Assembly: GCA_965637545.1 (NCBI GenBank)
Contig: OZ281497.1
Location: 19,282,001-19,346,000, forward strand
Reading direction: 5' to 3'
From: Phallusia mammillata
Lineage: Eukaryota
DNA: 64,000 bases
The notes beneath the pieces were generated by a model. It ran no database searches and was not told the origin of the DNA. It saw only the letters and a program-made list of their open reading frames with translations. A program made the position numbers and the translations under genes. This document shows, in pieces, positions 31,401 to 52,400 of this stretch. Each line of letters opens with the position of its first letter. Positions within the stretch are counted from its first letter, which is position 1.

Positions 31401-34400
31401 AACTGTTCCACTAGTTGAGCAGTGTCGCTTAAGTTTCTCGTTCGAAATTTGAATAGTTTTGTTTCTACCACTTCACAACCTTAAAAGAAATGGAAGCAAG
31501 TGATTCAAACTGCTGATTTTTTCCATTTTGTCAACAGTAACAATTGTATTTGCTAAAAATTAGTCAAAAGTCGTTCCTCGAGTTGTCTTTCCTACGATTT
31601 TTAAACGGTTTGGAACCTCATTTGTGCCGGCAAGCGCCGGATGTGGTTGCTTTTACGCCAGTTTGTAGTTGTACGATATCCACTATATGTCGCTACAGAG
31701 TTGTAAATCATACATGGCAATGAAGGCGTTTAATGCCCTGGAGTAATGGATGTGTGTCCATTAGAAATGCAGGTTCTGCTTTGTTGCAAGTTACCACACT
31801 GTTGTTTAGAAAGATAGATTCGGTCTGGTTCTTTATACTTTTGCTGACAACGTGTAAAATCATTAAAACTATGCCTTCCACAGGACTTATATTTCTTACA
31901 AGTTTTTTTTTTTAAGTACGGCGTTACTCATCCAGCAAATAGTTCTTCTTTTCTTGATAATGCAGGGTGTTTATGTTAACACTCGTTATTTGGTCTTCGA
32001 AAATGCTACGCTTTGTGGCGAAAAACAAAAATAGGCTTACAATGTGCTCAGCAGGGAGAGCAAAAAAGGTCGAGTGTTATTTGTGTTCGATCGAGTTTGC
32101 AAATAGCGAAAAATATTGTCGACCTCGTCTGATCTCGCGCACGGTTGGCGTAGTACGTCTCAATAAACAGAATGAACGCGGAAACCGATGTTGGGTGTTA
32201 GCTGGTCGCTCGCTGACTTTTCCCGGTTACTGACCTACGAAACCACGACTGGAGAATCGATTCCGACGAACTGATTTCGCTGAATCACTGATTTTCTGTT
32301 TTGGTGGCGTGGGCGGCTATTTGTGCCTAAAAAATCAGGTGAAAACCCGCTACAATGTAGTAGTCAGAATCGGTTTGTTTTGCACACGGCACGTGCTGAT
32401 GTGTTAGCCGGGCTTAATTTTGTTTTGGTTTTATTAATGTGGTTTGAACAAGCATGTGGTTACGTGTGGCCGATGGAAATTAAAAGTTTTGTCAGGTCTT
32501 TGCGCAACAAGTGTGGGCTGTGGCGTAAATAATGTTCCATCTTCATGCAATGAAGTCTAATATAAAACTCTTCTATTTGTCTTTCTGCTAGCAAGAACTT
32601 GCAGAAATGGGTAAACTCCATTGGGGTAATAAAACGTCAAGGTCAAACCTAAGGTTAAATGTTTATGAATGGCTACAGTATCAAATCGGCAATGTTAAAC
32701 AACATTAAAATATGCTTACCCCGTACAACAAATGAAACTTCTCGTACACATAAATCTGTCTTTGCTTGTCTCATTGCGAAACTGCGTAGATTTTAGTATA
32801 CGACTTGCGCAATTGTCGACTGAGGCCTAAAGTCAGCTGTGATTCCTTGTTTTATATTTAGCTCGAATCTATTTGCCAATAAATTTAAATAATTGACACA
32901 ACACATATTAAATAATTGACACAACCCAATAGTATTGACTTCTGTTACCAACAATCTCTATGCAAATTTGTCTCGTTACATGCAAATTAGCACGGGGTTT
33001 CAACGACAAGGAACTTGCATTTGTCCAATAATGTCAATAGTACTTAAATTTCGAAGGCTGGGGCAGCCAGAACGAATTTCCCAATCTTGACCAGGCTAAT
33101 TTGGCGTAATGGCATTGCGCGTTTTGTTTTAACTCCATTACTGCCCCGTGGGAACGAAGGGTAATCAAATCAGGACATTTGCTTCAGCGCCGAGCAAAGG
33201 TCTGTCATTTCCTGCCTCCTGATGCACAAAATCGATAAAATAAACTCAATACAAGCTGTATTTGCAAAAGCGATCGAACAGAGTCTGAAATAATCAAAAG
33301 ACAACAGGTCAAACCGGCGCCCAAACGAACAAAAGGAATATTTGCACAGCAAACATGCCGGATGTCTATGTGGCCGCCGATATGTGATTTAATCGAAAAT
33401 TAAAAGTGAAAGGACAATAGTACAATGCAATTTGTCTGTGCATCAACATCAGTAGGAGACCACAAGTGGCGCCAGGGTTATGTTGGCGCACGTCAAAATC
33501 GAGGTCGCGTATACCTGACGCGTGGCCAGACGACGATATTGTTCTCGACTCGTCTACGTGGGCGATTTCAAACGGCCAGACACTATTACATGACATGACA
33601 TTTTGCTCGCCGGAGTGCAACAAAACTGATGAGTCACGTGAATGTACGGACTATCACGTGACACCCGCAGGTGGCCGTCGTCATAAATCACACCAATTTC
33701 TTCGTACCAGCGTTTTGTTAGTTCTTTAAAATAATTTTATAAGTTGCGGCAATTAGTAATGACTCTTAAGTGGACATGAATTGGACCTGGGTGTGATTAG
33801 TATTGAACAAGTGCAACTGTTTGCCGCGCTCAATAGCACGTGTCGTGGTATTTAACAGAAGACGAAAATGATAAACTTATCACTTTCAAAAAGTAAAAAC
33901 ATATGTTTTGTAGCTATAATGTTTGTATGCACCTTGGAAACAGATCGGAATACAAGAAAAACAAGAAAATAACAAAGCATCTACAGAACACTACGGCACC
34001 GTGTACGCGCACGAGACGCTTCTTAACCAGTAAGAAAGCGATCAAGTGTGCGTTGAAGAAGCGATTTGAACATGTATCGACCTCCGCTAAGCACTCCATT
34101 GCTTTGTGTCTGTTTCTAAGGGAGACTGCTGTCTCTGTGGCTCCTTAAACCGGCGTGGTGTCTGCGATTGCGTTTCATGGACTTGCTGATGGTGGCTCCG
34201 TGCCAAGAACAACGCCCCCTAGTGGTTGGGGAACACAAGAAGTTGGCTTGATGAACGCTGTTTCCGTATTTTCGCTCCATTGCCTTGTTCCACGAACATT
34301 CGTTCTCGTTCTGAGTGTTAAAAATAATATACGTTTAAAAAAATGGCCTAACTCTGTTTGAATTTCCTGAATTGGTATTTTAAGATTACAGCTTCTTAAC

Positions 34401-37400
34401 AACAGAATGCATGATATAATAAAATATATATGTGGCAAAATAGCTTCCCGTTTCTTAACAAGTGTTAAAGATTGGTAGAGTAACAAGGTTTAAGAGGAAG
34501 CATTTCATATGTAACAAACTTCGCAATGTCTTACCTCAGGTTTGCAGTTACTCCATGGGCAGTAGCTGATATCGCATTTCGCTTCACAAACTTTGCCTAT
34601 CTGCTCCATGTTTTTGCGGATGTTGCGTTTTTCCCCTTTTGGTAGAGTCCTCCATGGGATGACGTGGTTGCAAAGTCCGACTGTGAGTCTTCCATCAACG
34701 ATGGAACCTTTGAAAAAAATGCATGGTTAAAAACCACTCGTTAAAGTGTTACTTATGCAAGGAACTGTAGCGTTTTAGGAACGTGAAAGGGCTCTTGCAG
34801 TTTTTACTGTATAGTTGAGTTGGAAATTTTCCGTGAAAGAAGTTTGTTCTTTTGTCACAGGCCCTCTGTATAAAGACTATTATGGAAAACTACAAGCCCT
34901 TGTTAGAAAACCGTATTCAACAGCACTTCCATTATGTTTTGCCCTGTCCATTACACGTAGAGTGTACTCTGGGTCATGTTCACCTCTCCAACGTGCGGTA
35001 ATTACGGGTGGAAACACAAGCGGCCGTGCGCGCGGCGCAATTTAGACCGCAGACCAAAGCACAAAAGGGTGCCTGCGTCGCCGTACAGAGGAAGTGATTC
35101 CACCGCAAAAATATGAGGCGACGGTGTAAAGGCAAAGCTACCAATTGGTCGCTACTTAACAGTCTGGCACAGTTCCTCTCACCTATTATCAGATAGGTGT
35201 CTCTGGGCTTGAGTCGGCGGCCACACAGGCCCTCATCCCGCGCCGAGTAGATGTACAGCTTTTGTTTGTTGGAGCCTTTCGTGTCGAAGCCCTTGTAAGC
35301 CTGGAATAACACAGGGAGCGCGTAAGAGACCGCCATGTATGTAAGCACTCAAAAACACAGGTTTGTTTTGTTTTCCCATCCCTCGGAACCAACCGATCCC
35401 ATAAATAACATCAATTTGAATTCTTCCCACTAACGCGTTTTGAATTCTCAGGGCTTGGCGTTGTTTTGTACAACAATTGACGTGCTGGCATGACATATAT
35501 TAAATTGCTACTTTGACCGTAAAGGAAAATTGCTTTAAATTGTCAATAGATGTTAGGAGTGTGTCATGCTGGAGCGACGTGCGATGGAAATCAATTGCGA
35601 ACCCACAAGTTGAATATTAAATCCTTGCACGGTTACATTCGTTCGTTTTATTGACCGAAAACTGATATTTGCTATCCTTGCTCTTTATAGGCGCAAACAC
35701 TACTAAAATGTGCAAACTCATTTTATCAAGGGTGTGTAAAATCTCTTGGGGCACAACGCGGCGTTAAAGCCTGATATAACCTGGACAGAGCCACACTAAA
35801 GGCTTTATAAGGCCGCGAACGCGCGTCATCTTGGCACTGTGGTGCATTAGGGATACGTTAGGGACCACGCGTCCCATAGTGGATACAGATTTGGCGTTAC
35901 TACAGCAATGACACGTCGCAAAGTTCTACATATGTCACATACCTTATGAACTTTTATTCTGTAACGCACGAGGCTTTCCATGACGTCATCATGGCCGGAT
36001 ACGTCATCAATTATTACCTCACCGGGTAGGGCAGTTGGAACGAAGCGGCCTGTGAAATTAAAACAGGTGTAAGTACATCCGTTCAATAACAGATGGATGG
36101 CTTCCTAAAGTTACGTTAACACTCATTCGCATATTTAGGAAGTCATTTCGGATTGTTTCCCTTGTAGTGGTAAAGTTATTTTACGGGTAGACAGAAAGGA
36201 ATGTCGTTGTCATGAGTGGATACCCTTGTGCAAAAGGTGTTTTGTCGCAAAAGTTAACAGTCGGAGCGTAAATTTCCATATAAGGTCATGTATTCGTTCA
36301 AAAATGTTTCAACCTCATATCCGCCTAAAGTTTTATTCACGCGCAAAGACAAATTAAGAGCATTTTCTACCGCAAATTAACATGTAAACTTCGCCGCAAA
36401 TCTGTAATCTTCTAGCGTTTTGTCCGCAAAATATCGAAATTTCCTCAGTAAAATAGCAGGTGTTGTTCAGGCAGCGCCTCATTAAAATTTTTGGGCGTCT
36501 GTACTACACGACATTAAACAAACTATTACAACCTTTGTGTGCCCTTGGTCGTTGCCCGCTTACGTGTTGTCGGGACGTTTTTAGATTACCTGGCAACTAT
36601 AGAAATAACTTCAAAACTTCCATGTGTTTAATTTTGGCGTCACACTCAAATCGCGGATTCCACGTCTTGAAATGAATTTCACTTTAATCTTATACCGCGA
36701 AACATCGTGTCGCTATTGTGTTTAAAGTTTTATCGTGAATTTTTATAAAGGCTGACGAAATACGAAATAAAACCTTCAGGTGACTAAATTCATTGAAAAA
36801 AATCTTTCCAGACAGCATTCTTGCATTAGTAGTTCACAAAGAGATGGCTTCGTTGAATATGTGGCTTTACTAAATATTTATTGTCAGATTGGCGTTTTTT
36901 GCTCTTTCTTTCAAAACTTTCAAAATGTGTAATGAATTTCTGTATAATGCTTACCGTTTTGGTCGGCCTCCTCCTTGTCAAATCTTCCTTTTGATGTAAG
37001 GATCATTGCGGCTGGTTTTTTGGCAGACTTCTTGTGGCGAATCTGCTCCACCGGCGGGACACTCACGAACATTTCTGACTTGATGCGCACCAATGCCACT
37101 GCAACGACAAACGGAATTTTCAAGAGCACGCCAAGCATGGAAATTTTACTGACAGGGATCAAGCATGAAAAATTAATGTCCGTTTGACGGAAACGGGAAT
37201 TCCGCTTTCCGCTTGTGCCCATGTCCAAACGAGTTAGTGATGCCGGGTTTCTATGTCAGTTGAGGCTGTTACGCTTGTCGCAATGAGGAGTGGCCAAAGA
37301 GAACTTATTGAGATGCTACTCATCGGAAAAGTTTATCAGAAATTTCTTTTCAATTGGTCTTTTAACTTTTGTTTTTTCCATAGGCTGTTTGCGACCGTCA

Positions 37401-40400
37401 TGTTCTTTCCTGCATAATTCGTTTAATTTTTAGTCCTATAGGTACCTATGGGTGCTGAAATGTTAGGCAAACGGCATGAAAATCTTGGTCTTTAAACAAA
37501 AAGTCGGGTAATATGGTTACGGTGAAATGAGGCAACTTTGCCTTATTCCCTTGTTGTTTTCAATGGGCCAACTGCTGGACCAAATTAAATTTAACGACGG
37601 TGCGTTGAAGCGCAAAATCGCGTTTTATGACGAATTGCATTTGCGGAGTCGGGTTCTAGGCACGGAAAAATTACCCATGCGTGAAGCGGCGTCGCGCAAA
37701 TCCTGTCCCGCAAAATTGATGGGCCGGAAAATGGGTCAGTGGCCATCGAAGTTTCAAGAATTATATTTAGTGCTAAAATATCGTTTGCAACTGGATTTTT
37801 GTCAAAAGTTTACAGGAAACTGTAAACGTGATTTAGGACTCGAACAGAATGAATTTATTTTATTTGTTTCCCGCTGTTTGTTAATAATTAATCTGATCAA
37901 GCTTTACGTGGTTACAGTTAATTCAACGAACTTTACCGTACGTTGTCCTATAGTGTCTACTTTTTTGACTATTTTGTTATTGAACAATCTACGATAAGAC
38001 AAACCAATACTTTAACTTACCAAAACTGTCGTTGCGGCATATATCCTTCTGGGGGTGGTTTGGCATACACATGCATCCAAATGCGCCATCCAATAAAAAC
38101 CCAAACACGAAGCTCGCCAAAATCATCGCTAACATTGCTCTCTTGTCATTCATGATGTAGTACAGATAAATTTTATACTTCACAAAAGGTTGTTTCTTTG
38201 CTCGTCGAGATCTGCTGTCCAATACCGTTGCTGTGCTGGTTTTATAGGCCACTGTCGCGAGTCAACTTAGTGCTCAGCAAAAAAAGAGAGAGTGTCGCGA
38301 AACGAGGAAAAAAAGCAATTTACTACTTCTCTCGTTTTTCGTTGACCGCCTCGAAACCGTTTGTGGAGCGAATGACGTCGATGTTTTGGCATCGGTTATA
38401 ACTGATTATGACGTATAATTGCCCGAGGTCAACCGCACCTCCAGTTCCATCAATCTTTTCCGAGTTGTTTAAGCGCCTTGTTTGCGAAGATACTGTCAGG
38501 CATAATCGCTAGCGGTATTTCTTTTTCACGCCTCAAAAACCTATTCTCAAAACATCTGCAAAAATACGCTCTAAATTTTATTAGCAACTCCTAATTCGGC
38601 CTTGTTTTCAAATTACTCAATTTGCATGCAACTTTAATAGATGTTGAGCATTATTGGCAGAAATACGATAGAACTTGCGTTTTTTTCGGTATAAGTATTG
38701 CAGTTTGTCAAATGTCAAATTTAGTACGTAGCAACGTTGGAACAGAAGAGTTTTTAATAAAAATGTTCCACTTATAGTTTAAACATCAACAATCAGCGTC
38801 AAATTGACCCTTGACACATAATTGCACCACTTTCTTCCGTTTCGACAATTTCAAACTACCTATAATACGTCACTGATTACGTCACATCACTTCCATGGAA
38901 GCAAACAACAGGGGCGCGGCTTACCCCAATAACAAAACATTACGTGAGGTCTATGGACGGATTTATCTCTCATCCATTTCGGTTTGGATGGAAGCTTTTC
39001 GGCCACCAACGGCGCTGTGTGCGTTTCTCCTCGCAAACATGTTTTTTTACTTTCCATCAATGACAAAAGCAAAGAATTTATTCGCTTTAGTTAAGCTCCA
39101 TGGCAGGATGCTGGTTGAGTGCCCGACGATGGTATATCACACCTTGACAATAGTTGGGTTTTCTGGGGTTCGTTGAACCTTTATTGCAAAAGTAGTAAAT
39201 TAAAGTCTAGTATAATTTCCGAAGTTTTGTGGGGCGCAAACGAGCGCTGATTGGCTTCTGAAGTATATTTAAAAAAAATTTCATGCAATATTACAAAAAA
39301 ATATTTTGATATAATTGCCATTTTTTGGTCTGGAAATTGTATTGAAGACAAATACTTTTACCCGTCATCTCTGAGATGGTGTCTTTCTCCAAAAAATCAT
39401 CATCGAGGGAACAACGACCCTTCCACCATGCACCGCTTGGGAGAAGAAAAATAACAACACTACGTCATATTATGGTGTGTAAGGCGAGAAACTGCGCCGA
39501 CATACGTATTTCACGGTCGGCAGGAGCAGCAACATGTGTGAGCACTTGAACCTTTGAAACAGTCGCTTTGTCACGTAGGAGATTAAATGCCACGAAAGGC
39601 GCTAGCTCAGGCCTTATTTGGTCATTACTTTTTGCCGCCTTTCAAGTACCCCGCTCTTGTGCAAAACACCTCAAACCTTTGTAGCTGACCGCAAAACTGC
39701 ATAAGGTTTCTATATTGAGGTGGTGCGTTAACAATACAGTCCAATGACGTGTTGTATCGAGGTCCACACCCGTTTGAATCATGGCCAAGACCTTTTCAAT
39801 CGTAGGTTGCACCTCACATTCCGGTCTTATCAAACCCCGTACATCTTGTTCGGTCCCACCCCTTAGTTGAACGCTCCTGATCCGGGCCTGGTCTTGTGTA
39901 AATCCACGCGCTGGTTACGGACATGTCTAAAAATGTGCCGCAGTTTCGTGTTTTGCGACATTGTAAATGACGTTTCGTATTTTGCATTTTTGTCCTGCTA
40001 GTGGTGATTTGGATAAGACAACTGTGTGATAAGTTTGTATTCCTTGCTAAGCACCAAGCTTCAATAATGAAGAATACTTGAAAGTGAGCAGAGATAAACG
40101 CAAATACCGCGCATACTTTGGACATAATTCAAATAATTTCTAAACGCAACGTCACAAAGCCCCAGGAGTTATGGCATTTGAAAAACCAAAATTTCATTAC
40201 AACATAACATGATACGAAATAAAGTTTGTGTGTGATGAGAAAAGTCAGTCATTACACATGCGCATTCTGCAGTAGGAAAAAACGATAGGTTGCGGTCAAA
40301 ACCGTTGGGAATCAAGACAAACGGGCGATAACGCGTCCATCGACAGCATTCCCGACGTCTTGACACCCAACACACGCTGTGAGAAGGGCAAGAAATACGT

Positions 40401-43400
40401 CGCGACGAACGGGTTTCCACATTTCCGCTTTCGGTTTTGATCGAATTTCCTGTGTGAAAAATGTTTCTACTTTAACCATCGGACCTTTAGCAAACCAATG
40501 ACGAGCGTATATGGATTCCATTACATATAAGGAGTTTGGAACCGTTTGTTACATGTACATTTAGAACCACGGTTCAATAAAAGAAATGCGGTTTTTAGAC
40601 CAGGATGCTCCATACGCTGTTTGCTTTTTGGGTATGTCTTCGAATACTAAATGGGTTGGTGACTTTGCGGGTACTGATCTATTTCAAGAAATAGTTTGTA
40701 TGTTACGTACGTCGCGACGAGACATGTCTGGGTTCATTGGCAAGTTAACGGCAATTTATAACTCAACTCCGGTTCAACATAAAAGTATTTGACGTATCAG
40801 CCTGACGTATGACGTACGTAGAGCAATACTTTGCACACTTTACCGGATATCAGGTCGCAACATGACGTTACGCATCTTAATGCGGGATGCAAAACGCAGC
40901 ACGTGATCCTTCGTTTCCTTTGGTGGAGAATAAGACAAGTAAGATTTTATTTGGGTTGGTCCCGAGTACGTCACTTCACTGGTCAACTTCAATACCATTT
41001 CAATCGCTTATTGGCGCAGTACGTCACTCTACATACGTAAGTTACGTTCGCACCGTATCTTTTACAAAATGAGTTATGCGTACAACGGAAGCAACTAAAA
41101 AGGCGACGATAGTAATAAAATACGTATTAGTGTCCCAGTGGAAACAGCGTGAATATAGAAGCACGTCATGTAACTGAAGTCGCACGAATATGCCAAGTAG
41201 TTGCGAAATTTCGCTCACGTGATTTATAATGCGCTCTGGATGGGACGTTGCATCACATGCGGAAAACGGACATTGTGACGTCACAATTGGCGCTAATTCG
41301 AATGACGCAAGTGTGAGATTACAATGGAAAGTTAGTGCGATTGCCAAATTTAGACCAAAGCCCGATTTAGACTAATCGGACATTATAGAATCACTGGATT
41401 AAAAAACTGTTTGTATCCGGACATATTTAACTAAAGTAGCTTTATTACAACTGTTGGCGTTAATATAATACATGTTGATCACTCAAGTCGCTGCTCTTGC
41501 TTGTAAAGTCCATGGCGTAAATACAACACCTTATAAAAAACTACAGCTGCGCTTAGTGTTGACATGTTGGCAATATTTACACAAAGAAGAGCTTACACAA
41601 AATGATGAAAAATGTCGGTCCAATTTTACTCAAACATTTTTCTACTGTTTCATTGATGGACATCACACCTTGGTTATATCAACAAGGTTGACAAACATGC
41701 AAGGTTTTTGTTTTATTTTAAATACTGTTTGAAAAAAATGCTAGCAGGTAGTAATTAGTTGGTTTATGAACTGACCTTTTAAACCGCTGAATCATAAGGC
41801 GTCTCGACAAACCTTTAAAAACAGTTTTGTAATCTGTAGGTTTTCGTTATTTTTCGTTATAATTCGTGTAGTTGTTAATCGACCAATCCTGCCTCACCCA
41901 CACCACAAATGTGAGTTTCTTCCTAATGTTGCCGCTTAATGAATTTCCACCTATGTTTTAAACAGCAAATGTGAACAACGTTACGTGAAGTGTTGCCTCC
42001 CTTGAGCGTGTAACACTGACGTCACGCGAGATGCCAAAACTGATAAGATTTGCCACGACCTTTTTAACTTGTTTCTAATATTTGGAATTCAACTTTACGA
42101 CCTTTTCCATCGCCTACTTTTACATTTGGCCTACATTGTTTACAACAAGACGATTCAATGTTAGCGAAGTTCAAAAGTTTCAACGTATTTAATCAAGTAA
42201 AATGCGGTGACTTGAACTTTTTGTCAGATTTGTTAAACCATTGCGCTGTTTGACCATAAGCCATCGTGAAAAATTGCAGCTTAAATGTAATAAGCTGCAG
42301 AAAGTTTAGCTCTTTTAAAGATTACTTTTACTTTACGCTGCTGTGGCAGTATGAAAAACAGCTTTACTCTTATTAAATGGCTTATCTAAGATCAATACTG
42401 TTGTCAACATCCCGGAAGAGATGTTGTCTGTTCGCGTAAGGATCGTTCTGGGTCAAGAAATGATCGAAGTGATGTGAATAGATTATATCATAAATTTGCC
42501 CAGTTGCCTCATATATAGTCATTATTCAACCTTAGACGTGACAAAAGGTGTTCTTAATGACGGCCGATAACCTTCGACGTATCGGCGCGAATGAATGTGA
42601 AACTGCTTTGTGCGTTCGTTTCTAGGCAACCTGGAACACAGTGCTATCCCTATCAATCTTTTGTTATCGCAAACTGCGTCAAATGCGCGGTGGTTACAGA
42701 ATTCGCTCACAGGAAATTATCTGTGCTTGTCAAGTGTAAATGTACTCTTGTGCAAAACTGAGGTCCCTCATCCCACTGAACCCTACAAAACAAATCTTAA
42801 CTACGTCATGTATGCTTTTACTTACTGTGACGTGCACGTTGACCTAAAACAACAACAAGGTTCGTGCCAATCGGAAGTTATAATGACGTAATATTTTTCA
42901 AAGAGATCGTGACAAAATTTTTTCTCGGGTTGCATGTATTTTAGACGTGTGCACTGTAGGCTTACCTTAGGAGTTAAGTGTTTGTACATAAAGACTGTTT
43001 GCACTTGGGTCAATAAAATTTCGGCACAATAGAGTTTGTTGGCACCGCACGCAGTCATGGCAAGACAAACAACTTTTACATCGATCTCGTCGCTAGGATA
43101 ACGTAATAGATCAAATACAATTTCCTTTATAATGCAAACTTAAGTATTGCCGAACGCTCGCAAATTACACTTGAACAAACGTCTCCTCTTCTCAATTTTT
43201 CTGCTATTTTGACCATCATGATCTTATATATTTATAGCGTTGTAGTTTTTATCTTTCACAAAACAACAGCTTGCAAAACAAAATGTGTTTGTACAAGTTT
43301 ATTCCAAGTACTTATAAAAAGAAACGCAAGATGTCGTACCACGCAAATAGAGCTTAAACATTTTTACGATGTCAGTAAAAAAGCAATCTCCAAACTATTT

Positions 43401-46400
43401 GGTTCCAACGTAGCGTATAGCCACCACAGAGTTGCAAGCTGGCATTCTAAAAGTCAGAATTAGGACAAAAAATTGGTAAAATTGCGGCGCAGATGATGCC
43501 GAGTGCAAAATCAGGTCCTAATCATTTTTTTAAAAACTTAAGCTAGAACCCGACCTGAAAACCCGGCTCGATTTACAGCTTTGAGCCACCAACCCCACTT
43601 TTGTTTCTCATACGGGATTTCGCAAACAAAACGAAGATACAAAATTTGCGCAACGACTGCATTACAAGCTAGCAAAACCGGTAAAAAGGATGCGGAAAAT
43701 AATATCGATGCGCCGGTTTTTCGTCTTTAGCACTTTGACAAGTATTTACAAAACTATTAGTGTTCGTTCAAGGCGATTCGACGATATCCAGGTCTTCTGG
43801 AGTCATGTTTTTGTTGTGTGCGTTGTACCATCCGCATCTGCCAGTCTTTAGCCGAATACAAGCAAATTGACTCGATTTTCCGGACATGACTGTGTAGATG
43901 TTGCGCCACAGGCAATGGCGAGGGCTGGCGATCTACACAAAATGAAAACTTTAATTTTCATACAACAGCAAAGTCTGAATTTCGATCCACTTTAGCACTT
44001 CAAGAGACCGGATGGCTCAAGATTGAAAAAAAATCCACCTTCTTTTATCGATAAAAAGAAACAACACTTATTTACCCAAGTAAAAAAAAAACTATAGCCT
44101 TGTTTTTTTATTTTGTTTTCGTTGTTTGTTCTATAAGCATAGGTGTAATATCATCATACATTAGTTCGGTTCAAATCCACTGAGAATCGTTACTTTCACG
44201 GTAAAAACAAATAAGCAGCCTTACCTGTGATGTACAGTCTCCACTTCTGCAAACGGAAACTGTGCAGTTTCCACATCCCCTTTTGAATCGATGTTTCATG
44301 TTTCCCACCAAGTTGCGCGCCTGTTCTCTCCCCAACATGCCCAGGTCGATCTTGTAATCGCAGTAGTTAATATGAAGTCGCGAATCTCTGACTTTGCCTG
44401 CAAAACAACACTTATGTTGGTCACTGAAGTTTCATACAAGCAAAATGAATTTAATCACATTTTTATCTCGGGTTCAGATGGAAATGATAATATTTGTTCA
44501 CTTTTCTCGTACAATAAATTACTGGGAGTTTTTACATCCACTTACCAAGGAGAAGGTAGCGCGTCCTCAGGTTCAGATCCATTCGGCACATGGGACTGCT
44601 TGGTGGAGTAAAAACGTACGCGGTTCCGTTTGTAATATCTCCTTTGAGAACCTGTGAATGAAACACGCTACATCATTTCCCCATGCCAAGTTAAAAAATG
44701 CAAATAAAGCTCGCAACGTCCGCGAATGTCAAGAACACTGTTTCTCAACCTTTTTCAGTCCAGTTTTGCCTTTGAGCGAAAAAACAACCATGAGCGAAAA
44801 ATGTGAAGTAATAAAATCTTTGTAAGAGTAAAAAAAACGCAGATCCATGTATAGCAGCGGTTCCCAAACTGGGGTCCGCGGTCCTTTAGGGGTCCGTGAG
44901 GCAATTTTGAGGGGACCGCGAGGCGATTGAAGTAATTCTTATAATCTTATTTGGCGTCAGTTTGTGCCACTAAATAAGTTTAAATCAAAGTAGAATTGAG
45001 AATCGACTGTCTCCATTGCTAAACAATGGCCTTTATTGAATGACAACTATAATAAATGCAATTGTTTGCGCACAATCGTAATGTTTTGTCCTGTTTGTGA
45101 TGTCACATGCTGTCTTTGGATGATTATTATGCGCAACTTTGCACAACTGGCTAAAATCCTGCAATCAACTTTTGTTTTTATGAAATACACATTTAGGCTT
45201 AAGGACCGCGAGCCCTCGAAATAATGGCAAGGGGACCGTTTAGAAAAAAATAGTAAAAAGTTTGGGAACCACTGATGTATAGTGTTTTAAAGTGAAAAAA
45301 CAGTCAAATATTTGACATGTTCAAAGACGAACAAAAAAAGATCAAAATCATGCTTGCTTATACCCGTGTAACTTGAACAGTGTATCGTGTCATTCTAACT
45401 CCTTTTCCCGTTGCACCACTTGGAATGTGACTTCCTGCAAAAACAAAAGAACAACTTTTGAAATGTGCTTTTAATGCACCGCAATGAGACTACGCAGAAG
45501 TATACACGTGCCTTGTATTTGCCCTATAATTGTAAAAAATACCTATTTTTAAATTCCAACTCAACTAATCTAGCAGTTATTAAATTGTAGATATATTTTA
45601 CCTGGAGTTCTGTCTCCCGGAAAAACAACCCCTCTTTTGTATCGCTCGTTGGCGACTTTGCTGGACCGAGGGTAGGCTGGTGGTCCGTTGTCGTCACTTC
45701 GAAGTGCAAATGCTCTTCCCGTGCCCTGCCATCAATATTATCTGTTAACTACTAAACTAGTGTGGGTTCAAATTACGTTTCACCGTACAATTTATCTAAA
45801 AAACGAAACTACCCCAAATTTTGACCAAACTTATATACCCGACTGAGGTTTTACAAGGTAACACAAACTGTGTATGTTGAGGTTGGGTCTTTACTTACTT
45901 CAAATCGCTCGTTTCGTCCCGGCATCGCCCCCTCTGGGCCTCTGTAGGTAGCGATGTATGCTGGGGGTCGGTAGGCAGCGGCTACTTCGGTTTCTCTCAA
46001 TGATGGACGAACCAAAGTCGCTACTTCGCCTTTGTCCTCCACTTTGAGATCTACCAATGCTTCACTATGTGCCTTTGACGACGTTGTGATCGAGTGTCCT
46101 AAAATCTCATTACCAGTTCCGGGCTCTTCCGCTTCTGGCTCCAAGGCCTCGGGTGGAGACACATCCACCGGTTCGCCATTGAGATCCTCCACCTCCGAGG
46201 AAGCAGCGTCAGGACCTCCACCATTTACTGTAAGGATCTCGTCCAAAAGCAAACCATTATCTGGTTCCTCCGGCAAAGGTTGACTTTCCACAGCTACACC
46301 GTCTATAACAGGTGCAGGGCGAGTTTCATCCCCTTCCCCCTCCTCTGTTACAACTTCCGGTTCATCTTTTTCTATCTCTGGTGACTCAACATCGCCCTCC

Positions 46401-49400
46401 CGTGGTTGTTCTTTTTCCTTCTTATTCTCATCGGGAATGACTTCGATTGATCCGTCACCATGAACGTAAACGTCTTCTTTTTCTCGAATATAGGCTTTTA
46501 TAGCTGTGAAACAATAATTTAGTTGGCGTTGCTGTTTAAAACACACTTAAATGTTACACTGTGGTATATTTAAGGTCATTGTCTGAGCAGTAGTTGCTTC
46601 AATTATTCTTTGGGAAACCTAATGGTCCACATTTACGTGAAATGTTAAATAGGGTCCCACAGGAATGATAACCTTTCATGCTCTGTGATGAAAAACTCCA
46701 TAATAACTGATTTAAACCATGAACTATTCGTTTCCGAGTCTTGACAAAGCTTGACGAACAATGTCTAGCCTACTTACCGAAACCGGCTTTGCAGAAAAGC
46801 ACTTGTGGATGTTCAGGCATACAAGAGCACGCTTCACTCGTAACTGCAACCGTCAGCAAGATGGCAAGTAAAATTCCAAATTTCATTTTGTCGTAGTTTT
46901 TTGTTCTGTCTACCATAAACATTAACTTACTAAACCTGTTGAGGCAAGTAAAAAGTCTTAATAATTTTGCAAAGGGAGGTCCTTTCACATCCAATTATCC
47001 TAACCAACTGCTAAAAGTGTCTTTACTTTACTCGTGAAACCGTCACTGTCACTGTAGATTATTCCTTAAGTGTACAACAATTGACGCACAAAAATTCCCA
47101 TTTCCTGGCAAAGACCTACGTCACGATCTATTGTTTCAATGATCTTCCGTCTATTTGACACAGATACAGCCTCTTAACCAACTTCAAACGGTATCAGGTA
47201 GATTTTAAACGGTTGAACGAAGCCAATGCTGCCGTAACGACTCACATGCGAAGAAGTGAAGTATAACAACGAGCAAGAAATGTGTGCAACGCTCGAGCCT
47301 TTAGCAACACATACATCATTACAATGCGTCGTAACAGCATACTATAACGACCTTGCTGACATTTTGCCAACTGACCCGTTATGTCCTACTAACGTTTGCA
47401 TGTAAATATATGTATGTCAACATGGATACTGCCTTAGCAGTGCAATATACGGTATTGACAAACTTGTGTCTGTAAACCAACCTTAAGTACACAAGACAAA
47501 GACTAAATTAATAACTAAATCACCGAGCTTAATTAATAACTAATTCGTCGAACTCAATTAATAATGTAACCGCCGGTAAACTAGCATAAAACGCATTCAT
47601 CTCATTTCCCTTGCCATACCAACGCTGCACATTATGCTACTTTGACATCATTTTCGACGAACCAACTTTCATAAAGTTTAATGTCCACTTTGCGGACGTA
47701 AGTTTTACACAAAACTTTGTTTTTGGCAGCCGATAGCCACTCTGCTCAGCCTCAAAAGGCTGATGCCAAGTTTACGCCAACTTCAGCTTATAAATATCCC
47801 TATTTCCTTCCATACATTTTATACGTTCCCTAGGCGCAACGATTCTTCGCCATAAAAGAAGGAAGGTATTACGTGCGCCACTTAGCATGTGATGCGCATT
47901 CAATCTCTTGCTACCCAAGTGCTGGCTTCCTCCTAGCCTCAGTGAATGCCACCAACTCACGGGTTACGTCTCCATTTAAACGCTGAGCGTGGCCGACTGC
48001 GTCTTCTGGCTGTTCTGTCGCAGGAGAATATGTGCAACTTTCTATTGCTGTTTCACTGCCGCGTAAGTGACGCATCAGCTTGTTGCGCACCTATTGAGAA
48101 AGTCTCTTTGAGCGGTGGATAATATTTACAACAACCTTTTACGGCTCTAGCAGCAACTGGGTAATGTCAATGACATGTCGTGGGCAACATAGTATCACAT
48201 TGATTTCTCCTATAAATGAGATGAATTTTTTGGCGGAATTATGAACAGGCAATAAACCTCATGGCGAATTTTTGTGATGTTTACGGATATGCAGACCTCG
48301 TATTTTTACACTGCCAAGATTTGACCCCCATGTCTAAAATTTAATGTTTTCCAGACTTTGCTTGTCTGATCCGCCCATGTTGTCTGGCAAAATCGCCTTA
48401 CGGTTGCTAGGATTTCAGGAGTCGGAAAAGTACAAAGGCGTTTTCTGCACGCGGTCTTGTCAAGCTGAATAGGAATGGTGTTGATAAACAAGTTATTCCC
48501 GTGGCCCAGTTCCCCCTCCTCAGCATTATACTACAGTTGTATATAGACTGAGGCATTGTTGATATTTCACGAATATCCAGTGCAAGCGGAATTACAGTGT
48601 CTTACGTCATGCATATAGTTGCATGCTGAATTACGTATAAAACATGGGAATGAATTCAGCGTCCTAAATAACAGAATTGAGAATTTATTTCATGTCATCG
48701 CGTATCTAATACAAAATCGCCCACCGTCACGTGATAAAAGCGTTGGCATCAGCATGAAAAACCAAGAACGGTTTTCTTTCTTGCTGTAGCGAATGTCGAA
48801 TATTTGCTATTGATTGAAACATGTGAAGGTTTTAAAGATCTTTTATGTGTTACAATTTCAACCTTAACGTGTTAAACACAACTGTATCCCCGCTAGACGT
48901 GTTTGGGAGTGTATTTCAAGTTGTGTTTCCGACAAGCATGTAGTTTTTTTTATTGAGAAACGCCGTTTGCGTCTTGAAAACAGTGTTTTAGTGAATTACA
49001 CTGATCAATACGTATCCATTTCATATCCATTTGCTTATAACAGCCTTGGGGTGGCCGACTTTGTAACTTGGTGACGCACGTCTTAGCAATGACCTTGGCA
49101 ACAAAATATGTTTTATTGCTTACTATGACATAAATTTGCATCAGTCGTCTTGATCATCGATGATGGTAAATGCGACACTATTGTATTTAACATTTTAGAC
49201 GTTGGCGAAATGTTTGCAACATGATGTGCTTTTGTAGTCGCTATAGTAGACACAAAGTGTATAATTATCTTATACAGGCTTATAAGCTTTTATACTATGT
49301 GACTGTTTTGAAGGGACACGGCCTATGAAACTAACGGAGACTCATTAACCAATAACTATTACTAATGCCACTTAAAGTGAAACTTGCATATCTTCCAGAT

Positions 49401-52400
49401 CAACATGATTTATCAGATCAAAATTTGCGCCCAATAAAACGAGCTATACTTTAAATTAATTTAAAATATATTAGTCACAAAGTCGTATACCTCTAATATA
49501 TGTTTTTCAGCTTACTTCTTCCCATTTCCCGATCGTTCTGAAGATCGGGCATGCTCACCGCGGGATGGCCAAGTTCAAAGTCGAAAACCATTACCAGTTT
49601 CAGGACGTGGTGAGCGTCGCAGCTCTCACTAACGCCTACGTGGTGGCTGAGAAGTTTATTGACGCAAAATATGACATCCGTGTACAGAAGATAGGCGGCA
49701 ACTACAAAGCTTACATGTAAGTGGGATCTGTCGATCTTGTGTGTTAGAATTACACACCATCTGGCTTGGTATGTCAACGAGCTTGTTGCTGCAGTTTTGC
49801 GGGTTTGGCTTCATTTCGATATACACGACAAGGCGTTGTAACAGACGTTTTGCGGCTTGATTAGTAAATTTAGTGCTGTGTGCATGACTTTTTGTTGCAC
49901 CTGTTTTGGCCTTGGGATGAAGCATTAATCTTTTCCTTGGGAATTAGAATACTATAAATCGACAAACAATTTATAGTGTTGTCAATGTGTTGTAAAGTAT
50001 ATTGCATATTATACGACGTTTTGTCTAAATTTTAAAAATCGAATAAAGACAGAGTTGTTGTAGCCGAATTTCCGATGTCATAGATGTAGCTTATTGTTAT
50101 CAAATCTTCGACAGAAACGACGTACATTTTCTTCCAAATTACTAAGAAATTTAGGAACACTATACACGGACCTGAAGAGTAATTTAATCAAAAACATAAC
50201 TACTAGACACAATTTGGCAATTATGTTTTTAATTAAACTAAGAAATGTAATTTAAAATTTCTGTACACCAATGTCAAGTTGAATAACTGGGTAATTTGAG
50301 CAACGCAATAATAAGAAAGGTAATGCTGATATCAGGGGATAAATCCAAACAAAGTTGCGGTTATTAAAAAATGTTTGTGCACCAATTTTTTAGGTTGATA
50401 CCATTCAACATGATAATTTGCGTTTTCCTAAGTCTTATATGTTTAGCAGTTACCAGATATGGCGCAATTTGACACCAAACATCAATTGTCATACCATTCC
50501 CGTGGGTGACCGTTAATTGAGTTCTTCCACGCATGCCCAGTATTTAAATTTCTCTCGCACTAAAGGTACAGCACGTGTCAACTTTTAAATGTCATTATTT
50601 GCATCATTGTTTTTCTCCATAGCCTGTGCTCTCGAAAAATTGTTACAAATGTGTTTTGTAAAGATTCAGTCGATTATCGTAAAATTGCATTGAAATGACG
50701 GGACGTTTTGCTATTCGATTCCAATATCTGTCAAAAACGACATTTGTTTGCACGATTTATTGCATATACGCCCTCTGGCCTGGATGCCACATGTAACTAC
50801 TTCTTCGATCGTTGCTGTATTGACATTCTGTCACGTTCGTAATTTTAAAATGCTGTATTTACAATTGCAGTCGTTGGGTAATCTAATAACTGTCAACGGT
50901 TTGTCTGCATTTTATTTCAAAAACATTGCAGGGTGTTTATATTAGACAAACAGTTTGTTGTAAAAATGCGACATAAATAACCCCTTTATATCAATAAGTA
51001 CTAGAGAGTAAAATCCACATTCTAAATTTTATCCATTAACAAAACAAGGAAAATATTTGCCGAAACGTTTGAACAATAAACACTGATGATGGCATGAGCA
51101 TTTGCCGAAACGTTTGAACAATAAAGCATGTCGCTTTTTATGTCTATTTGGGCCGTAATTTTCACCATTAAACTTATGAACAGATCCGTATATAGTGTTC
51201 CAAAGGAAATATATTTTACAATTAACGGTGATTTCGCCCAATTCTTAACAGATTTACCCAAAGAGTCAAATTATAACGAACGTTTGATGATAAGGTCACT
51301 ATGGTGTATAAAACAGTACTGCTTTGAAAACATTACACTTAAAGTTTTGCACAATTTTCAATCCCACCTCGTTTTCTAAGCAGTAGAAAGCAAAACTAAT
51401 TAAACCGAATAATTTGCAAACAATAAAGAATTTGCCATCGTTTATTGGTTGACATTGTCCTACACAAACAATTCCTGTAAATGCGGCCAAGAAGACAGGT
51501 TTGCTTAAAAACAAAACACCAAAAATTTGAATATGCTTTTCAGTCGCACTTCGATTTCTAAGAATTGGAAAGCAAACACTGGTTCAGCGATGTTGGAGGA
51601 AATAGCTGTGACAGAACGACACAAGTTGTGGGTGGATGCCTGCAGCGAAATGTTTGGAGGTCTGGACATCGTCACTGTTAACGCCGTTCACGGAAATGAT
51701 GGGAAGGATTACATTATTGAGGTTGGGCTTGACGTGTTTGTGAGATGAAAAACACTGTTGCTTTTTCTCGAGTTTTACCTAAACTTACAAATTTTAATTG
51801 TTGCTTATTGATAAATGAGTTCTTATGCTGACCGATAGACGAAACAAATGCAGAAAAAATACTGGGAACTCTTTCACTATTATTTAAATAAAAGTGGTTC
51901 TAAACCTGGCAAGAATCCCATCCCAGCGAAAAATTCTTACAAATTCTGAGCAAGAATTGCACTTTTGCATTTGCGTGTTGTTTATACAACAAGATAATTT
52001 TGGCAGCATGGCATTCGAAGTTGTGTGGAGTCCATCTTAAATATTTTTGTTCTGTTTAGCTTTATATATTTTGTTTGTGTTATATCAGCATGAAATCAAA
52101 TTTTCAAATGACAAACAAAGCAATACAGCTATCATGAAAAAATGTCTTACTCGTTTCAAATCTGATTGAAAAAAATGTTTTAGATAAGGCAAAAAGGGCG
52201 TGCAATAAAAAAATTTTAAAAAATGTTATTCCTATATCTAATGGGATGCAATAAAAACATATCAATAGTTTGTTATTCTGTTCTATCCGACTTTCGTCAT
52301 TTTTGCGCCGCGACAAATGTTCGACTTCAACTGTATTCCGACTTCCTTTTACCGCGTAACCTGTACCGTGTTTACACCTTCGTCACCAAGCCACCGAATC

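What the first reader, a model, noticed from the sequence alone, without database searches (positions are those of the whole stretch)
45602..46503. TIMP-B carries a roughly 240-residue acidic, Pro-rich insertion in the AB loop
Seen: between strand A (AIKAYIREK) and strand B (LFFRETELQ|VLKG) lie about 240 open-frame residues rich in E/D/P/V, across two exons, while the 12-Cys scaffold and CSC N-terminus are intact. Known: the TIMP AB loop is normally about 10-20 residues and contributes to MMP selectivity (for example TIMP-2 with MT1-MMP). The tail EDLDIVESP resembles the acidic TIMP-2 tail that binds proMMP-2. Inference: a doubled-size TIMP with a disordered polyanionic arm that may change target range, bind cations or matrix, or be a regulatory cleavage site.
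Basis: partly seen in the sequence, partly recalled or inferred. Interest (0 to 1): 0.75.

Follow-up and report, generated by a model that had tools for sequence, protein, structure and literature searches.

The report
Sea-squirt TIMP with giant disordered loop
A sea-squirt protease-inhibitor gene (a TIMP) really makes an mRNA for a double-sized protein with a roughly 250-residue floppy, mostly acidic loop in one hairpin; the loop is kept in at least three sea-squirt species and carries a conserved furin-type cutting site, which makes it an unusual but testable variant of a well-known family.

Summary
Spliced RNA contigs from three runs in two studies define a 7-exon, 450-residue TIMP on the minus strand. 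It has a signal peptide, a Cys-Ser-Cys N-terminus and 12 cysteines.

A 248-residue insert lies between strand A (AIKAYIREK) and the true strand B ([10 protein letters not shown]|VLKG). It is spread over three exons, not two.

The insert is always included in the contigs seen. By composition it looks disordered (net charge -29 on a +15 core), and AlphaFold gives a low-confidence model (pLDDT 51).

Two other ascidian-like sequences (L001, L002) keep the insert in frame with the same intron positions. Shared features:
- an acidic first part and a +6 second part
- the motifs DGSxEVI, YRGP[ED]GAMPG and GPPxY
- an R-x-K-R furin-type site 24-32 residues before strand B

The tandem paralogue TIMP-A has a normal short loop. 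Both TIMPs sit inside a synapsin intron, as published for Ciona.

I found no paper or annotated protein that describes the insert. What it does is inferred, not shown. I class it as a new variant of a known kind, of moderate interest.

The parts
46778..46886 (-). TIMP-B exon 1 (coding part): ATG at 46886, signal peptide, and the mature N-terminus [17 protein letters not shown]. It ends in phase 1. The 5' UTR reaches at least 46936.
   Evidence: RNA joint 46778/46503 with GT..AG ends in X1 and X3; the X2 contig runs to 46936. Translation.
45899..46503 (-). TIMP-B exon 2 (605 nt): strand A (AIKAYIREK) followed by the first 193 residues of the insert. This covers the acidic arm and the [22 protein letters not shown] island.
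   Evidence: Joints 46503/46778 and 45898/45724 in X1, X2 and X3 and none in DNA run X5. Homologues P0001 and P0003. No Pfam family. AF2 pLDDT 51.
45602..45725 (-). TIMP-B exon 3 (124 nt, phase 0 to 1): [41 protein letters not shown].
   Evidence: Joints in X1, X2 and X3. Same length and frame in L001. Only this frame keeps the 450-aa ORF open.
45633..45644 (-). Codons for R-Y-K-R (residues 266-269), a furin-type R-x-[KR]-R motif inside the insert, 24 residues before strand B.
   Evidence: The aligned positions are RHKR in L001 and RQKR in L002. The polymorphism at 45637 gives RYRR, which keeps the motif.
45917..45946 (-). Codons for [10 protein letters not shown] (residues 223-232), the most conserved island of the insert.
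   Evidence: 9 of its 10 residues are invariant across the window, P0001 and P0003 (E/D at one position).
45364..45434 (-).
   Evidence: 72 extra letters lie between exon 3 and exon 5 in the contigs of X1 and X2, at joints 45433/45601 and 44649/45362. 90% identical in L001.
44546..44651 (-). TIMP-B exon 5: [36 protein letters not shown]. This corresponds to the C-D region that holds the Cys pairing with Cys1.
   Evidence: Joints. Weak alignment to N-TIMP-2 residues 60-79. 82% identical in L001.
44225..44397 (-). TIMP-B exon 6: the rest of the N-domain and the start of the C-domain, with 5 Cys.
   Evidence: Pfam PF00965 TIMP, E 3.5e-6, 27.4 bits against a cut-off of 23.1. Aligns to TIMP-2 residues 93-137.
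43377..43932 (-). TIMP-B exon 7: the last 54 codons (ending at 43771, tail ...[11 protein letters not shown]), the stop codon at 43768-43770, and about 390 nt of 3' UTR.
   Evidence: X1 contig 43377-43932 joined to exon 6. Aligns to TIMP-2 residues 140-180, E 0.0014.
34116..38153 (-). TIMP-A, the tandem paralogue used as an internal control. It has 5 exons and 12 Cys. A single 107-nt exon 2 encodes a normal short A-B region ([36 protein letters not shown]).
   Evidence: tblastn and GT..AG model. Not checked against RNA.
44850..45279 (.). A very high-copy element with terminal inverted repeats (MITE-like) inside intron 4. It is not part of the protein.
   Evidence: DNA word depth of 0.65-1.1 million against about 300 in the flanks. 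Inverted arms at 44850-44889 and 45198-45279.

Best explanation
Shown:
- TIMP-B is a real, transcribed, secreted-type TIMP of an ascidian.
- Its A-B beta-hairpin carries a 248-residue insertion, encoded by an enlarged exon 2 and two extra small exons.
- The insert is present in every spliced contig seen and has no detectable fold or family.
- It is retained in frame, with the same intron positions, in two other ascidian-like genomes.
- It has two parts. The first is an acidic arm of about 155 residues that diverges fast but keeps its composition. The second is a Pro/Gly/Tyr/Arg-rich segment of about 90 residues with net charge +6 and conserved short motifs, including an R-x-K-R site.

Inferred:
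- The protein most likely still inhibits metzincin proteases through the intact Cys1 ridge (CSCxP, HPQ, SSPMC).
- The insert projects from the hairpin that in vertebrate TIMP-2 and TIMP-3 tunes protease selectivity. It would act as a disordered polyanionic arm that changes which proteases or matrix partners the very basic core (pI 9.5) can reach.
- A furin-type convertase probably cuts at R-x-K-R in the secretory pathway. That would open the loop and give a two-chain inhibitor still held together by the Cys1, Cys3 and Cys13 disulfides.
For: - Six GT..AG joints appear in RNA contigs of X1, X2 and X3 (two studies) and are absent from DNA run X5. The joined exons give one 450-aa ORF.
- TIMP identity: Pfam PF00965 scores above its cut-off on exon 6. 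The best solved matches are TIMP-2 chains. There are 12 Cys. The gene is nested in a synapsin intron, as published for Ciona (PMC2825198).
- Disorder: no Pfam or Atlas match; AF2 pLDDT 51 and pTM 0.13, from a 3-sequence alignment; the charge-hydropathy values fall on the disordered side.
- Conservation: P0001 is 52% and P0003 34% identical over exon 2. L001 keeps exons 2-5 and L002 exons 1-7 in frame. Exon-2 length differences are multiples of three.
- Charge pattern in window/L001/L002: acidic part -35/-24/-23, second part +6/+6/+6.
- RYKR/RHKR/RQKR align, and the K268R polymorphism keeps the motif.
- TIMP-A next door has a short loop.
Against: - No protein-level data exist. Inhibition, secretion, cleavage and binding partners are all untested.
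- dS is saturated between the species, so dN/dS could only be computed for short pieces: 0.18 for the end of exon 2 and 0.10 for the core. Selection on the acidic arm is not quantified.
- Only three species were found.
- The L001 and L002 gene models are by homology, without RNA support. L002 may have an extra intron or 32 extra in-frame residues in exon 3.
- The AF2 run used a 3-sequence alignment, so low confidence is only weak proof of disorder.
- R-x-K-R could be a basic binding patch rather than a cleavage site.
- A 250-residue chain beside the reactive ridge could equally abolish inhibition.
Confidence: 0.6

Rival explanations
1. Pro-TIMP (latent inhibitor). The acidic arm folds back on the basic core and masks the reactive ridge or a glycosaminoglycan-binding surface. 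Cleavage at R-x-K-R, or by a target protease at the collagen-like GPEG-AM stretch, switches the inhibitor on or releases it from or to the matrix.
For: - The insert (-29) and core (+15) carry opposite charges, and this is conserved in L002, whose core has pI 9.0.
- The R-x-K-R motif is conserved.
- The conserved YRGP[ED]GAMPG island resembles collagenase-site sequences. That resemblance is from memory and was not tested.
- The insert sits in the hairpin next to the protease-binding edge (established TIMP-2/MT1-MMP structural knowledge).
Against: - One cut at R-x-K-R does not release the arm. It stays attached through strand A and three disulfides, and no second conserved site was found near strand A.
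- No known TIMP needs activation.
- There are no structural or biochemical data.
Confidence: 0.15
2. Neofunctionalised TIMP-like matrix protein, in the way holothurian tensilin is a TIMP-like collagen-binding stiffener. The TIMP fold is only a scaffold, and the insert carries the function, for example binding tunic or ECM components or cations.
For: - Echinoderm TIMP-like proteins with non-inhibitory roles are documented (PMC8467561).
- The gene is one of two tandem copies, which frees one copy to diverge.
- Conserved short motifs lie in an otherwise fast-evolving disordered region.
Against: Every inhibitory hallmark that tensilins and other TIMP-like proteins tend to lose is kept here and in L002: C-x-C with one residue between the cysteines, HPQ, and 12 Cys.
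Confidence: 0.15
3. Tolerated passenger. The insert is a neutral, slowly eroding disordered expansion with no role of its own, for example exonised former intron sequence.
For: - The acidic part is only 30-48% identical between species and has many indels.
- No homologue was found outside this gene.
- It has no predicted fold.
Against: - It is kept open and in frame, with conserved intron positions, across species whose synonymous sites are saturated.
- The charge pattern and several motifs are conserved.
- dN/dS is 0.18 at the end of exon 2.
- It is included in the mRNA in every spliced contig seen.
Confidence: 0.08
4. Annotation or assembly artefact: the long open frame is intronic or non-coding, and the real mRNA skips it.
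For: None found.
Against: - Spliced contigs from three runs contain all of exon 2 joined to exons 1 and 3.
- Skipping exons 2-4 would remove strands A and B.
- Only about 0.001 such open frames are expected by chance.
Confidence: 0.02

Closest known systems
Vertebrate TIMP-2 (solved structures 1br9, 1gxd, 1bqq)
   Same: - It is the best solved-structure match for exons 5-7.
- Both have a CxC N-terminus, an HPQ motif and 12 Cys.
- Both have a long A strand with an EKE motif and an acidic C-terminal tail.
- Both genes belong to the TIMP family that is nested in synapsin introns.
   Different: - TIMP-2 has about 194 residues, and its A-B hairpin is a tight beta-hairpin of a few dozen residues.
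- Here about 248 disordered residues and two extra introns are inserted in that hairpin.
- HMMER did not align the tails.
The two TIMP genes of Ciona intestinalis nested in the synapsin intron (CiTIMPA and CiTIMPB, PMC2825198)
   Same: - Same locus architecture: two TIMPs in reverse orientation inside one synapsin intron.
- The window's synapsin motifs are 79-93% identical to Ci-Syn.
   Different: - The paper lists coordinates and model IDs only. Neither its text nor supplementary file 1 mentions an insertion.
- I could not retrieve the Ciona protein sequences, so one-to-one orthology with CiTIMPA or CiTIMPB is not shown.
TIMP-A, the tandem paralogue in this window
   Same: - Same strand and same intron phases, including the intron just before the [LY]KG motif.
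- 12 Cys and a basic mature protein (pI 9.5).
   Different: - It is 31% identical in the core.
- Its A-B region is encoded by one 107-nt exon with a loop of about 13 residues, against 800 nt in three exons in TIMP-B.
Tensilin and other echinoderm TIMP-like proteins
   Same: They are lineage-specific, diverged TIMP paralogues in an invertebrate deuterostome, thought to have matrix roles (PMC8467561).
   Different: - Tensilins differ at the N-terminal C-x-x-C and by losing motifs. No giant hairpin insert is described in the passages I read.
- TIMP-B keeps the canonical inhibitory motifs.

Membership tests
TIMP (Pfam PF00965; tissue inhibitors of metalloproteinases) | Significant match to the TIMP family profile | tested here: met
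   The reading frame containing exon 6 scores 27.4 bits (E 3.5e-6) against a gathering cut-off of 23.1. Exon 7 gives E 0.056. The best PDB matches are TIMP-2 and TIMP-1. The full-length spliced protein could not be submitted by reference.
TIMP (Pfam PF00965; tissue inhibitors of metalloproteinases) | Signal peptide followed directly by the Cys-x-Cys N-terminus whose Cys1 chelates the catalytic zinc, plus the HPQ motif | tested here: met
   The product begins [19 protein letters not shown]|[13 protein letters not shown]. L002 has the same pattern (CMCQPEHPQVLYC). The signal-peptide cleavage site is inferred by eye, not predicted with a tool.
TIMP (Pfam PF00965; tissue inhibitors of metalloproteinases) | Twelve conserved cysteines (six disulfides) spread over the N- and C-domains | tested here: met
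   The mature products of TIMP-B, L002 and TIMP-A each have 12 Cys. The Cys of exons 6 and 7 align with TIMP-2 Cys. Disulfide pairing was not tested.
TIMP (Pfam PF00965; tissue inhibitors of metalloproteinases) | Compact size (about 184-194 residues) with a short A-B beta-hairpin | tested here: not met
   The mature protein has 431 residues, with 248 residues between strands A and B. This is the variant feature. It is typical of the family but is not a defining catalytic or structural requirement.
TIMP (Pfam PF00965; tissue inhibitors of metalloproteinases) | Tight-binding inhibition of MMPs or ADAMs | not testable with these tools
   This needs recombinant protein and enzyme assays.
Synapsin-nested TIMP locus | TIMP gene lying in reverse orientation inside a synapsin intron | tested here: met
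   Synapsin exon matches lie on the + strand at 25876-28240 and at 49526-49609. They flank both minus-strand TIMPs. The arrangement is described in PMC2825198.
Proprotein-convertase (furin) substrates | An R-x-[KR]-R motif in an accessible, disordered segment of a secretory protein | tested here: met
   RYKR at residues 266-269 in the low-confidence, disordered insert. The aligned positions are RHKR and RQKR in L001 and L002, and an RYRR allele exists.
Proprotein-convertase (furin) substrates | Actual cleavage after the motif | not testable with these tools
   This needs protein chemistry: reducing against non-reducing gels, N-terminal sequencing or mass spectrometry.

The most novel reading that the evidence does not exclude
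TIMP-B is a latent, proteolytically switched inhibitor (a 'pro-TIMP'). The conserved acidic loop shields the basic core or reactive ridge. A convertase cut at the conserved R-x-K-R, possibly together with a target-protease cut at the collagen-like [10 protein letters not shown] island, opens the loop and changes inhibitory range or matrix retention. As far as I know no TIMP needs such activation, so this would be the first one regulated like a zymogen.
Probability: 0.15. Interest if true: 0.8.

Novelty: new variant of a known kind. Interest (0 to 1): 0.5.

Why it matters
TIMPs are among the most uniform extracellular inhibitors in size and shape. Their A-B hairpin is one of the few elements known to set protease selectivity, as with TIMP-2 and MT1-MMP or TIMP-3 and ADAM17.

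[quoted passage not shown] Several features make it a ready-made experiment:
- a normal-loop paralogue lies next door as an internal control
- the charge is split between an acidic arm and a basic core
- a candidate convertase site is conserved

Together these allow a test of how a disordered arm can retarget, tether or gate a protease inhibitor. The locus also shows a coding exon growing about seven-fold and gaining two introns.

It would matter less if the arm proves to be a passive spacer.

Tried and rejected
Searches that found nothing:
- Word-based protein search with the 231-aa open frame that contains exon 2: no hit.
- The same search with a three-sequence profile: only P0001 and P0003 again, and no annotated full-length protein. 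The length filter (up to about 467 aa) could hide longer models.
- ESM Atlas feature search: no usable hit.
- Pfam on the insert pieces: no family.
- JGI metagenome scan with the profile: only the L002 contig again.
- Self-comparison of the insert: no internal repeats. tblastn against the window: no second copy. So there is no evidence for a repeat-expansion or local-duplication origin.

Results set aside:
- The exhaustive search gave three hits. P0002 (3084 aa, no aligned stretch) was set aside as probably compositional and was not inspected.
- Tail homology to TIMP-2 is not supported by the alignment, because HMMER stops at residue 180 of 194.

Readings rejected:
RNA shows another frame and an intervening exon.

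Not done:
- The full-length spliced protein was not folded or searched. It has no contiguous reference and I did not paste it.
- The species behind the window, L001 (run DRR090687) and L002 (JGI 3300001463) were not identified by name.
Full report
**What is in the sequence**

The region lies in a minus-strand gene. Reading the minus strand shows a signal peptide and a [10 protein letters not shown]-terminus at 46886-46778. After an intron, a 231-codon stop-free frame holds exon 2, which begins with AIKAYIREK. With the window's base composition, about 0.001 frames of that length are expected over both strands. The long frame is therefore not chance.

**Transcript evidence**

One sequencing-run search found runs of the same organism. 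I laid X1, X2, X3 and the DNA run X5 on 43200-47100.
- X1-X3 are labelled RNA only as a guess. Their contigs carry six joints with GT..AG ends on the minus strand. The DNA run has none of these joints, so the contigs are spliced RNA.
- The runs come from two studies.
- The joints define seven exons: 46886-46778, 46503-45899, 45725-45602, 45434-45364, 44651-44546, 44397-44225 and 43932-43377.
- Joined, they give one 450-codon ORF ending ...[10 protein letters not shown].
- No contig skips exon 2, 3 or 4.
- A low-depth X1 contig runs unspliced from exon 5 into intron 4 and looks like pre-mRNA.
- Contigs cannot exclude rare isoforms.

- Exon 2 ends in phase 0 at the GTAAGT donor.
- The acceptor used in RNA places exon 3 in the frame reading GTGRAF...[16 protein letters not shown].
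- Exon 3 does not join VLKG directly. A 71-nt exon (45434-45364) lies between them and encodes ...[15 protein letters not shown].
- Exons 3 and 4 together are 195 nt, which restores the frame.
- The true strand B is [10 protein letters not shown]|VLKG. It matches the paralogue's [10 protein letters not shown]|AYKG.
- The insert is 248 residues (46-293) over three exons.

**Is it a TIMP?**

- The reading frame containing exon 6 passes Pfam's TIMP cut-off, at 27.4 against 23.1 bits.
- Exons 5, 6 and 7 align to TIMP-2 residues 60-79, 93-137 and 140-180. TIMP-2 is the best solved match.
- The mature protein has 12 Cys, the C-x-C N-terminus and HPQ.
- Short Ci-Syn motifs taken from the supplement of PMC2825198 match + strand exons at 25876-28240 and at 49526-49609, with 79-93% identity.
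- Both TIMP-B and a second TIMP (TIMP-A, 38153-34116, minus strand) therefore sit in one synapsin intron in reverse orientation. That paper describes the same arrangement for Ciona intestinalis.

**Nature of the insert**

- It has no Pfam family, no Atlas look-alike and no internal repeat.
- Composition: E 15%, G 11%, P 10.5%, V 9%. Net charge is -29 and pI 4.4. The 183-residue core has net charge +15 and pI 9.5.
- Charge-hydropathy values fall on the disordered side.
- AlphaFold2 on the exon 2 product, with a three-sequence alignment, gives pLDDT 51 and pTM 0.13. The only structure is a small hairpin, [11 protein letters not shown], right after strand A. With so shallow an alignment this is weak but consistent evidence of disorder.
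- The first 157 residues or so are strongly acidic (net -35). The last 91 are Pro/Gly/Tyr/Arg-rich with net +6.

**Relatives**

The exhaustive HMMER search with exon 2 found only two real relatives.
- P0001 is 52% identical. It lies on a 1.7-kb Logan contig of run DRR090687, fetched as L001.
- P0003 is 34% identical. It lies on a 13.6-kb animal contig in JGI metagenome 3300001463, fetched as L002.
- Both are open frames that start at strand A and end at the same exon 2 donor.
- L001 carries exons 2-5 with identical phases and intron positions. Its exons 3, 4 and 5 have identical lengths of 124, 71 and 106 nt.
- L002 carries all seven exons and predicts a 483-residue protein with 12 Cys. It may have one extra 96-nt in-frame intron in exon 3; I modelled it as spliced, without RNA support.
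- Exon 2 lengths differ by 42 and 45 nt, both multiples of three.
- Core identity is 49% for window TIMP-B against L002, but 31% and 27% against TIMP-A. L002 is therefore a B-type orthologue, and the insertion predates the split of these species.
- TIMP-A encodes the whole A-B region in one 107-nt exon. The B lineage thus gained 693 nt and two introns there.

**Conserved features inside the insert**

- DGSxEVI just after strand A.
- AAxxAYxxxYRGP[ED]GAMPG at the end of exon 2.
- GPPxY in exon 3.
- An aligned R-x-K-R (RYKR, RHKR, RQKR) lying 24, 24 and 32 residues before strand B.
- The KG[VI]R lead-in to strand B.
- The charge pattern is also conserved: the acidic part is -35/-24/-23 and the second part +6/+6/+6.
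- Among the four differences between runs, one changes RYKR to RYRR, which still fits R-x-[KR]-R. The others are E91D, P70A and one synonymous change.
- Synonymous sites are saturated between species. dN/dS could be computed only for short pieces: 0.18 at the end of exon 2, 0.37 for the start of exon 4, and 0.10 for the core.

**How it most likely works**

Shown: the gene makes an mRNA for a secreted-type TIMP with intact inhibitory motifs and a conserved, probably disordered, bipartite insert in the A-B hairpin.

From established knowledge: that hairpin borders the protease-binding edge. In TIMP-2 it contacts MT1-MMP, and in TIMP-3 it contributes to ADAM17 binding.

Inferred:
- The protein remains an inhibitor, and the insert acts as a flexible polyanionic arm. 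The arm would alter which proteases or matrix partners the basic core can engage.
- R-x-K-R is cut by a furin-type convertase.
- Cys1, Cys3 and Cys13 lie before the insert and pair with cysteines after it. A cut would therefore open the loop but leave a disulfide-linked two-chain molecule with the acidic arm still attached.

Rivals:
- A latent pro-TIMP gated by that cut.
- A tensilin-like, non-inhibitory matrix protein (PMC8467561).
- A neutral passenger.
- An artefact, which one search excludes.

**Novelty**

- Three full-text searches and two papers on Ciona metzincins and synapsin-TIMP loci mention no insertion.
- PMC1867822 found one Ciona TIMP, and PMC2825198 found two.
- No annotated full-length protein with this insert came up in the protein collections. 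Length filters and incomplete eukaryote coverage limit that statement.
- I rate it a new variant of a known kind.

**Limits**

- I did not fold or search the full-length spliced protein, because it has no contiguous reference.
- Species names were not established.
- All functional statements are untested.

Noticed in passing
window 25876-28240 and 49526-49609 (+ strand): Synapsin exons are 79-93% identical to Ciona intestinalis Ci-Syn motifs. They flank both TIMP genes, so the conserved synapsin-TIMP nested locus is present here with two guests in one intron.
   Followed up: partly
window 34116-38153 (- strand): TIMP-A is a tandem paralogue with 5 exons, 12 Cys, a normal short A-B loop and a long basic C-terminal tail ([19 protein letters not shown]). 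The model is by homology and GT..AG rules only and was not checked against RNA.
   Followed up: partly
window 44850-45279 (intron 4 of TIMP-B): An element of about 430 bp has terminal inverted repeats (CAGCGGTTCCCAAACT... / ...AGTTTGGGAACCACTG). Its DNA word depth is 0.65-1.1 million against about 300 in the flanks, so it is a MITE-like repeat present in thousands of copies. Fragments also appear in the RNA-run contigs.
   Followed up: partly
window 45637, 46340, 46358, 46405: Single-base differences between runs inside the insert-coding exons: K268R (inside the RYKR motif, giving RYRR), E91D, a synonymous P85 change and P70A.
   Followed up: yes
L002 5719-5814: In the distant relative, exon 3 seems to be split by an extra 96-nt intron that is itself open and in frame. 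Without RNA it could equally be 32 extra coding residues.
   Followed up: no
window 44623-44881: A low-depth X1 contig (5.7 against about 290-345 for the spliced contigs) runs unspliced from exon 5 into intron 4. It is probably pre-mRNA or genomic carry-over.
   Followed up: no
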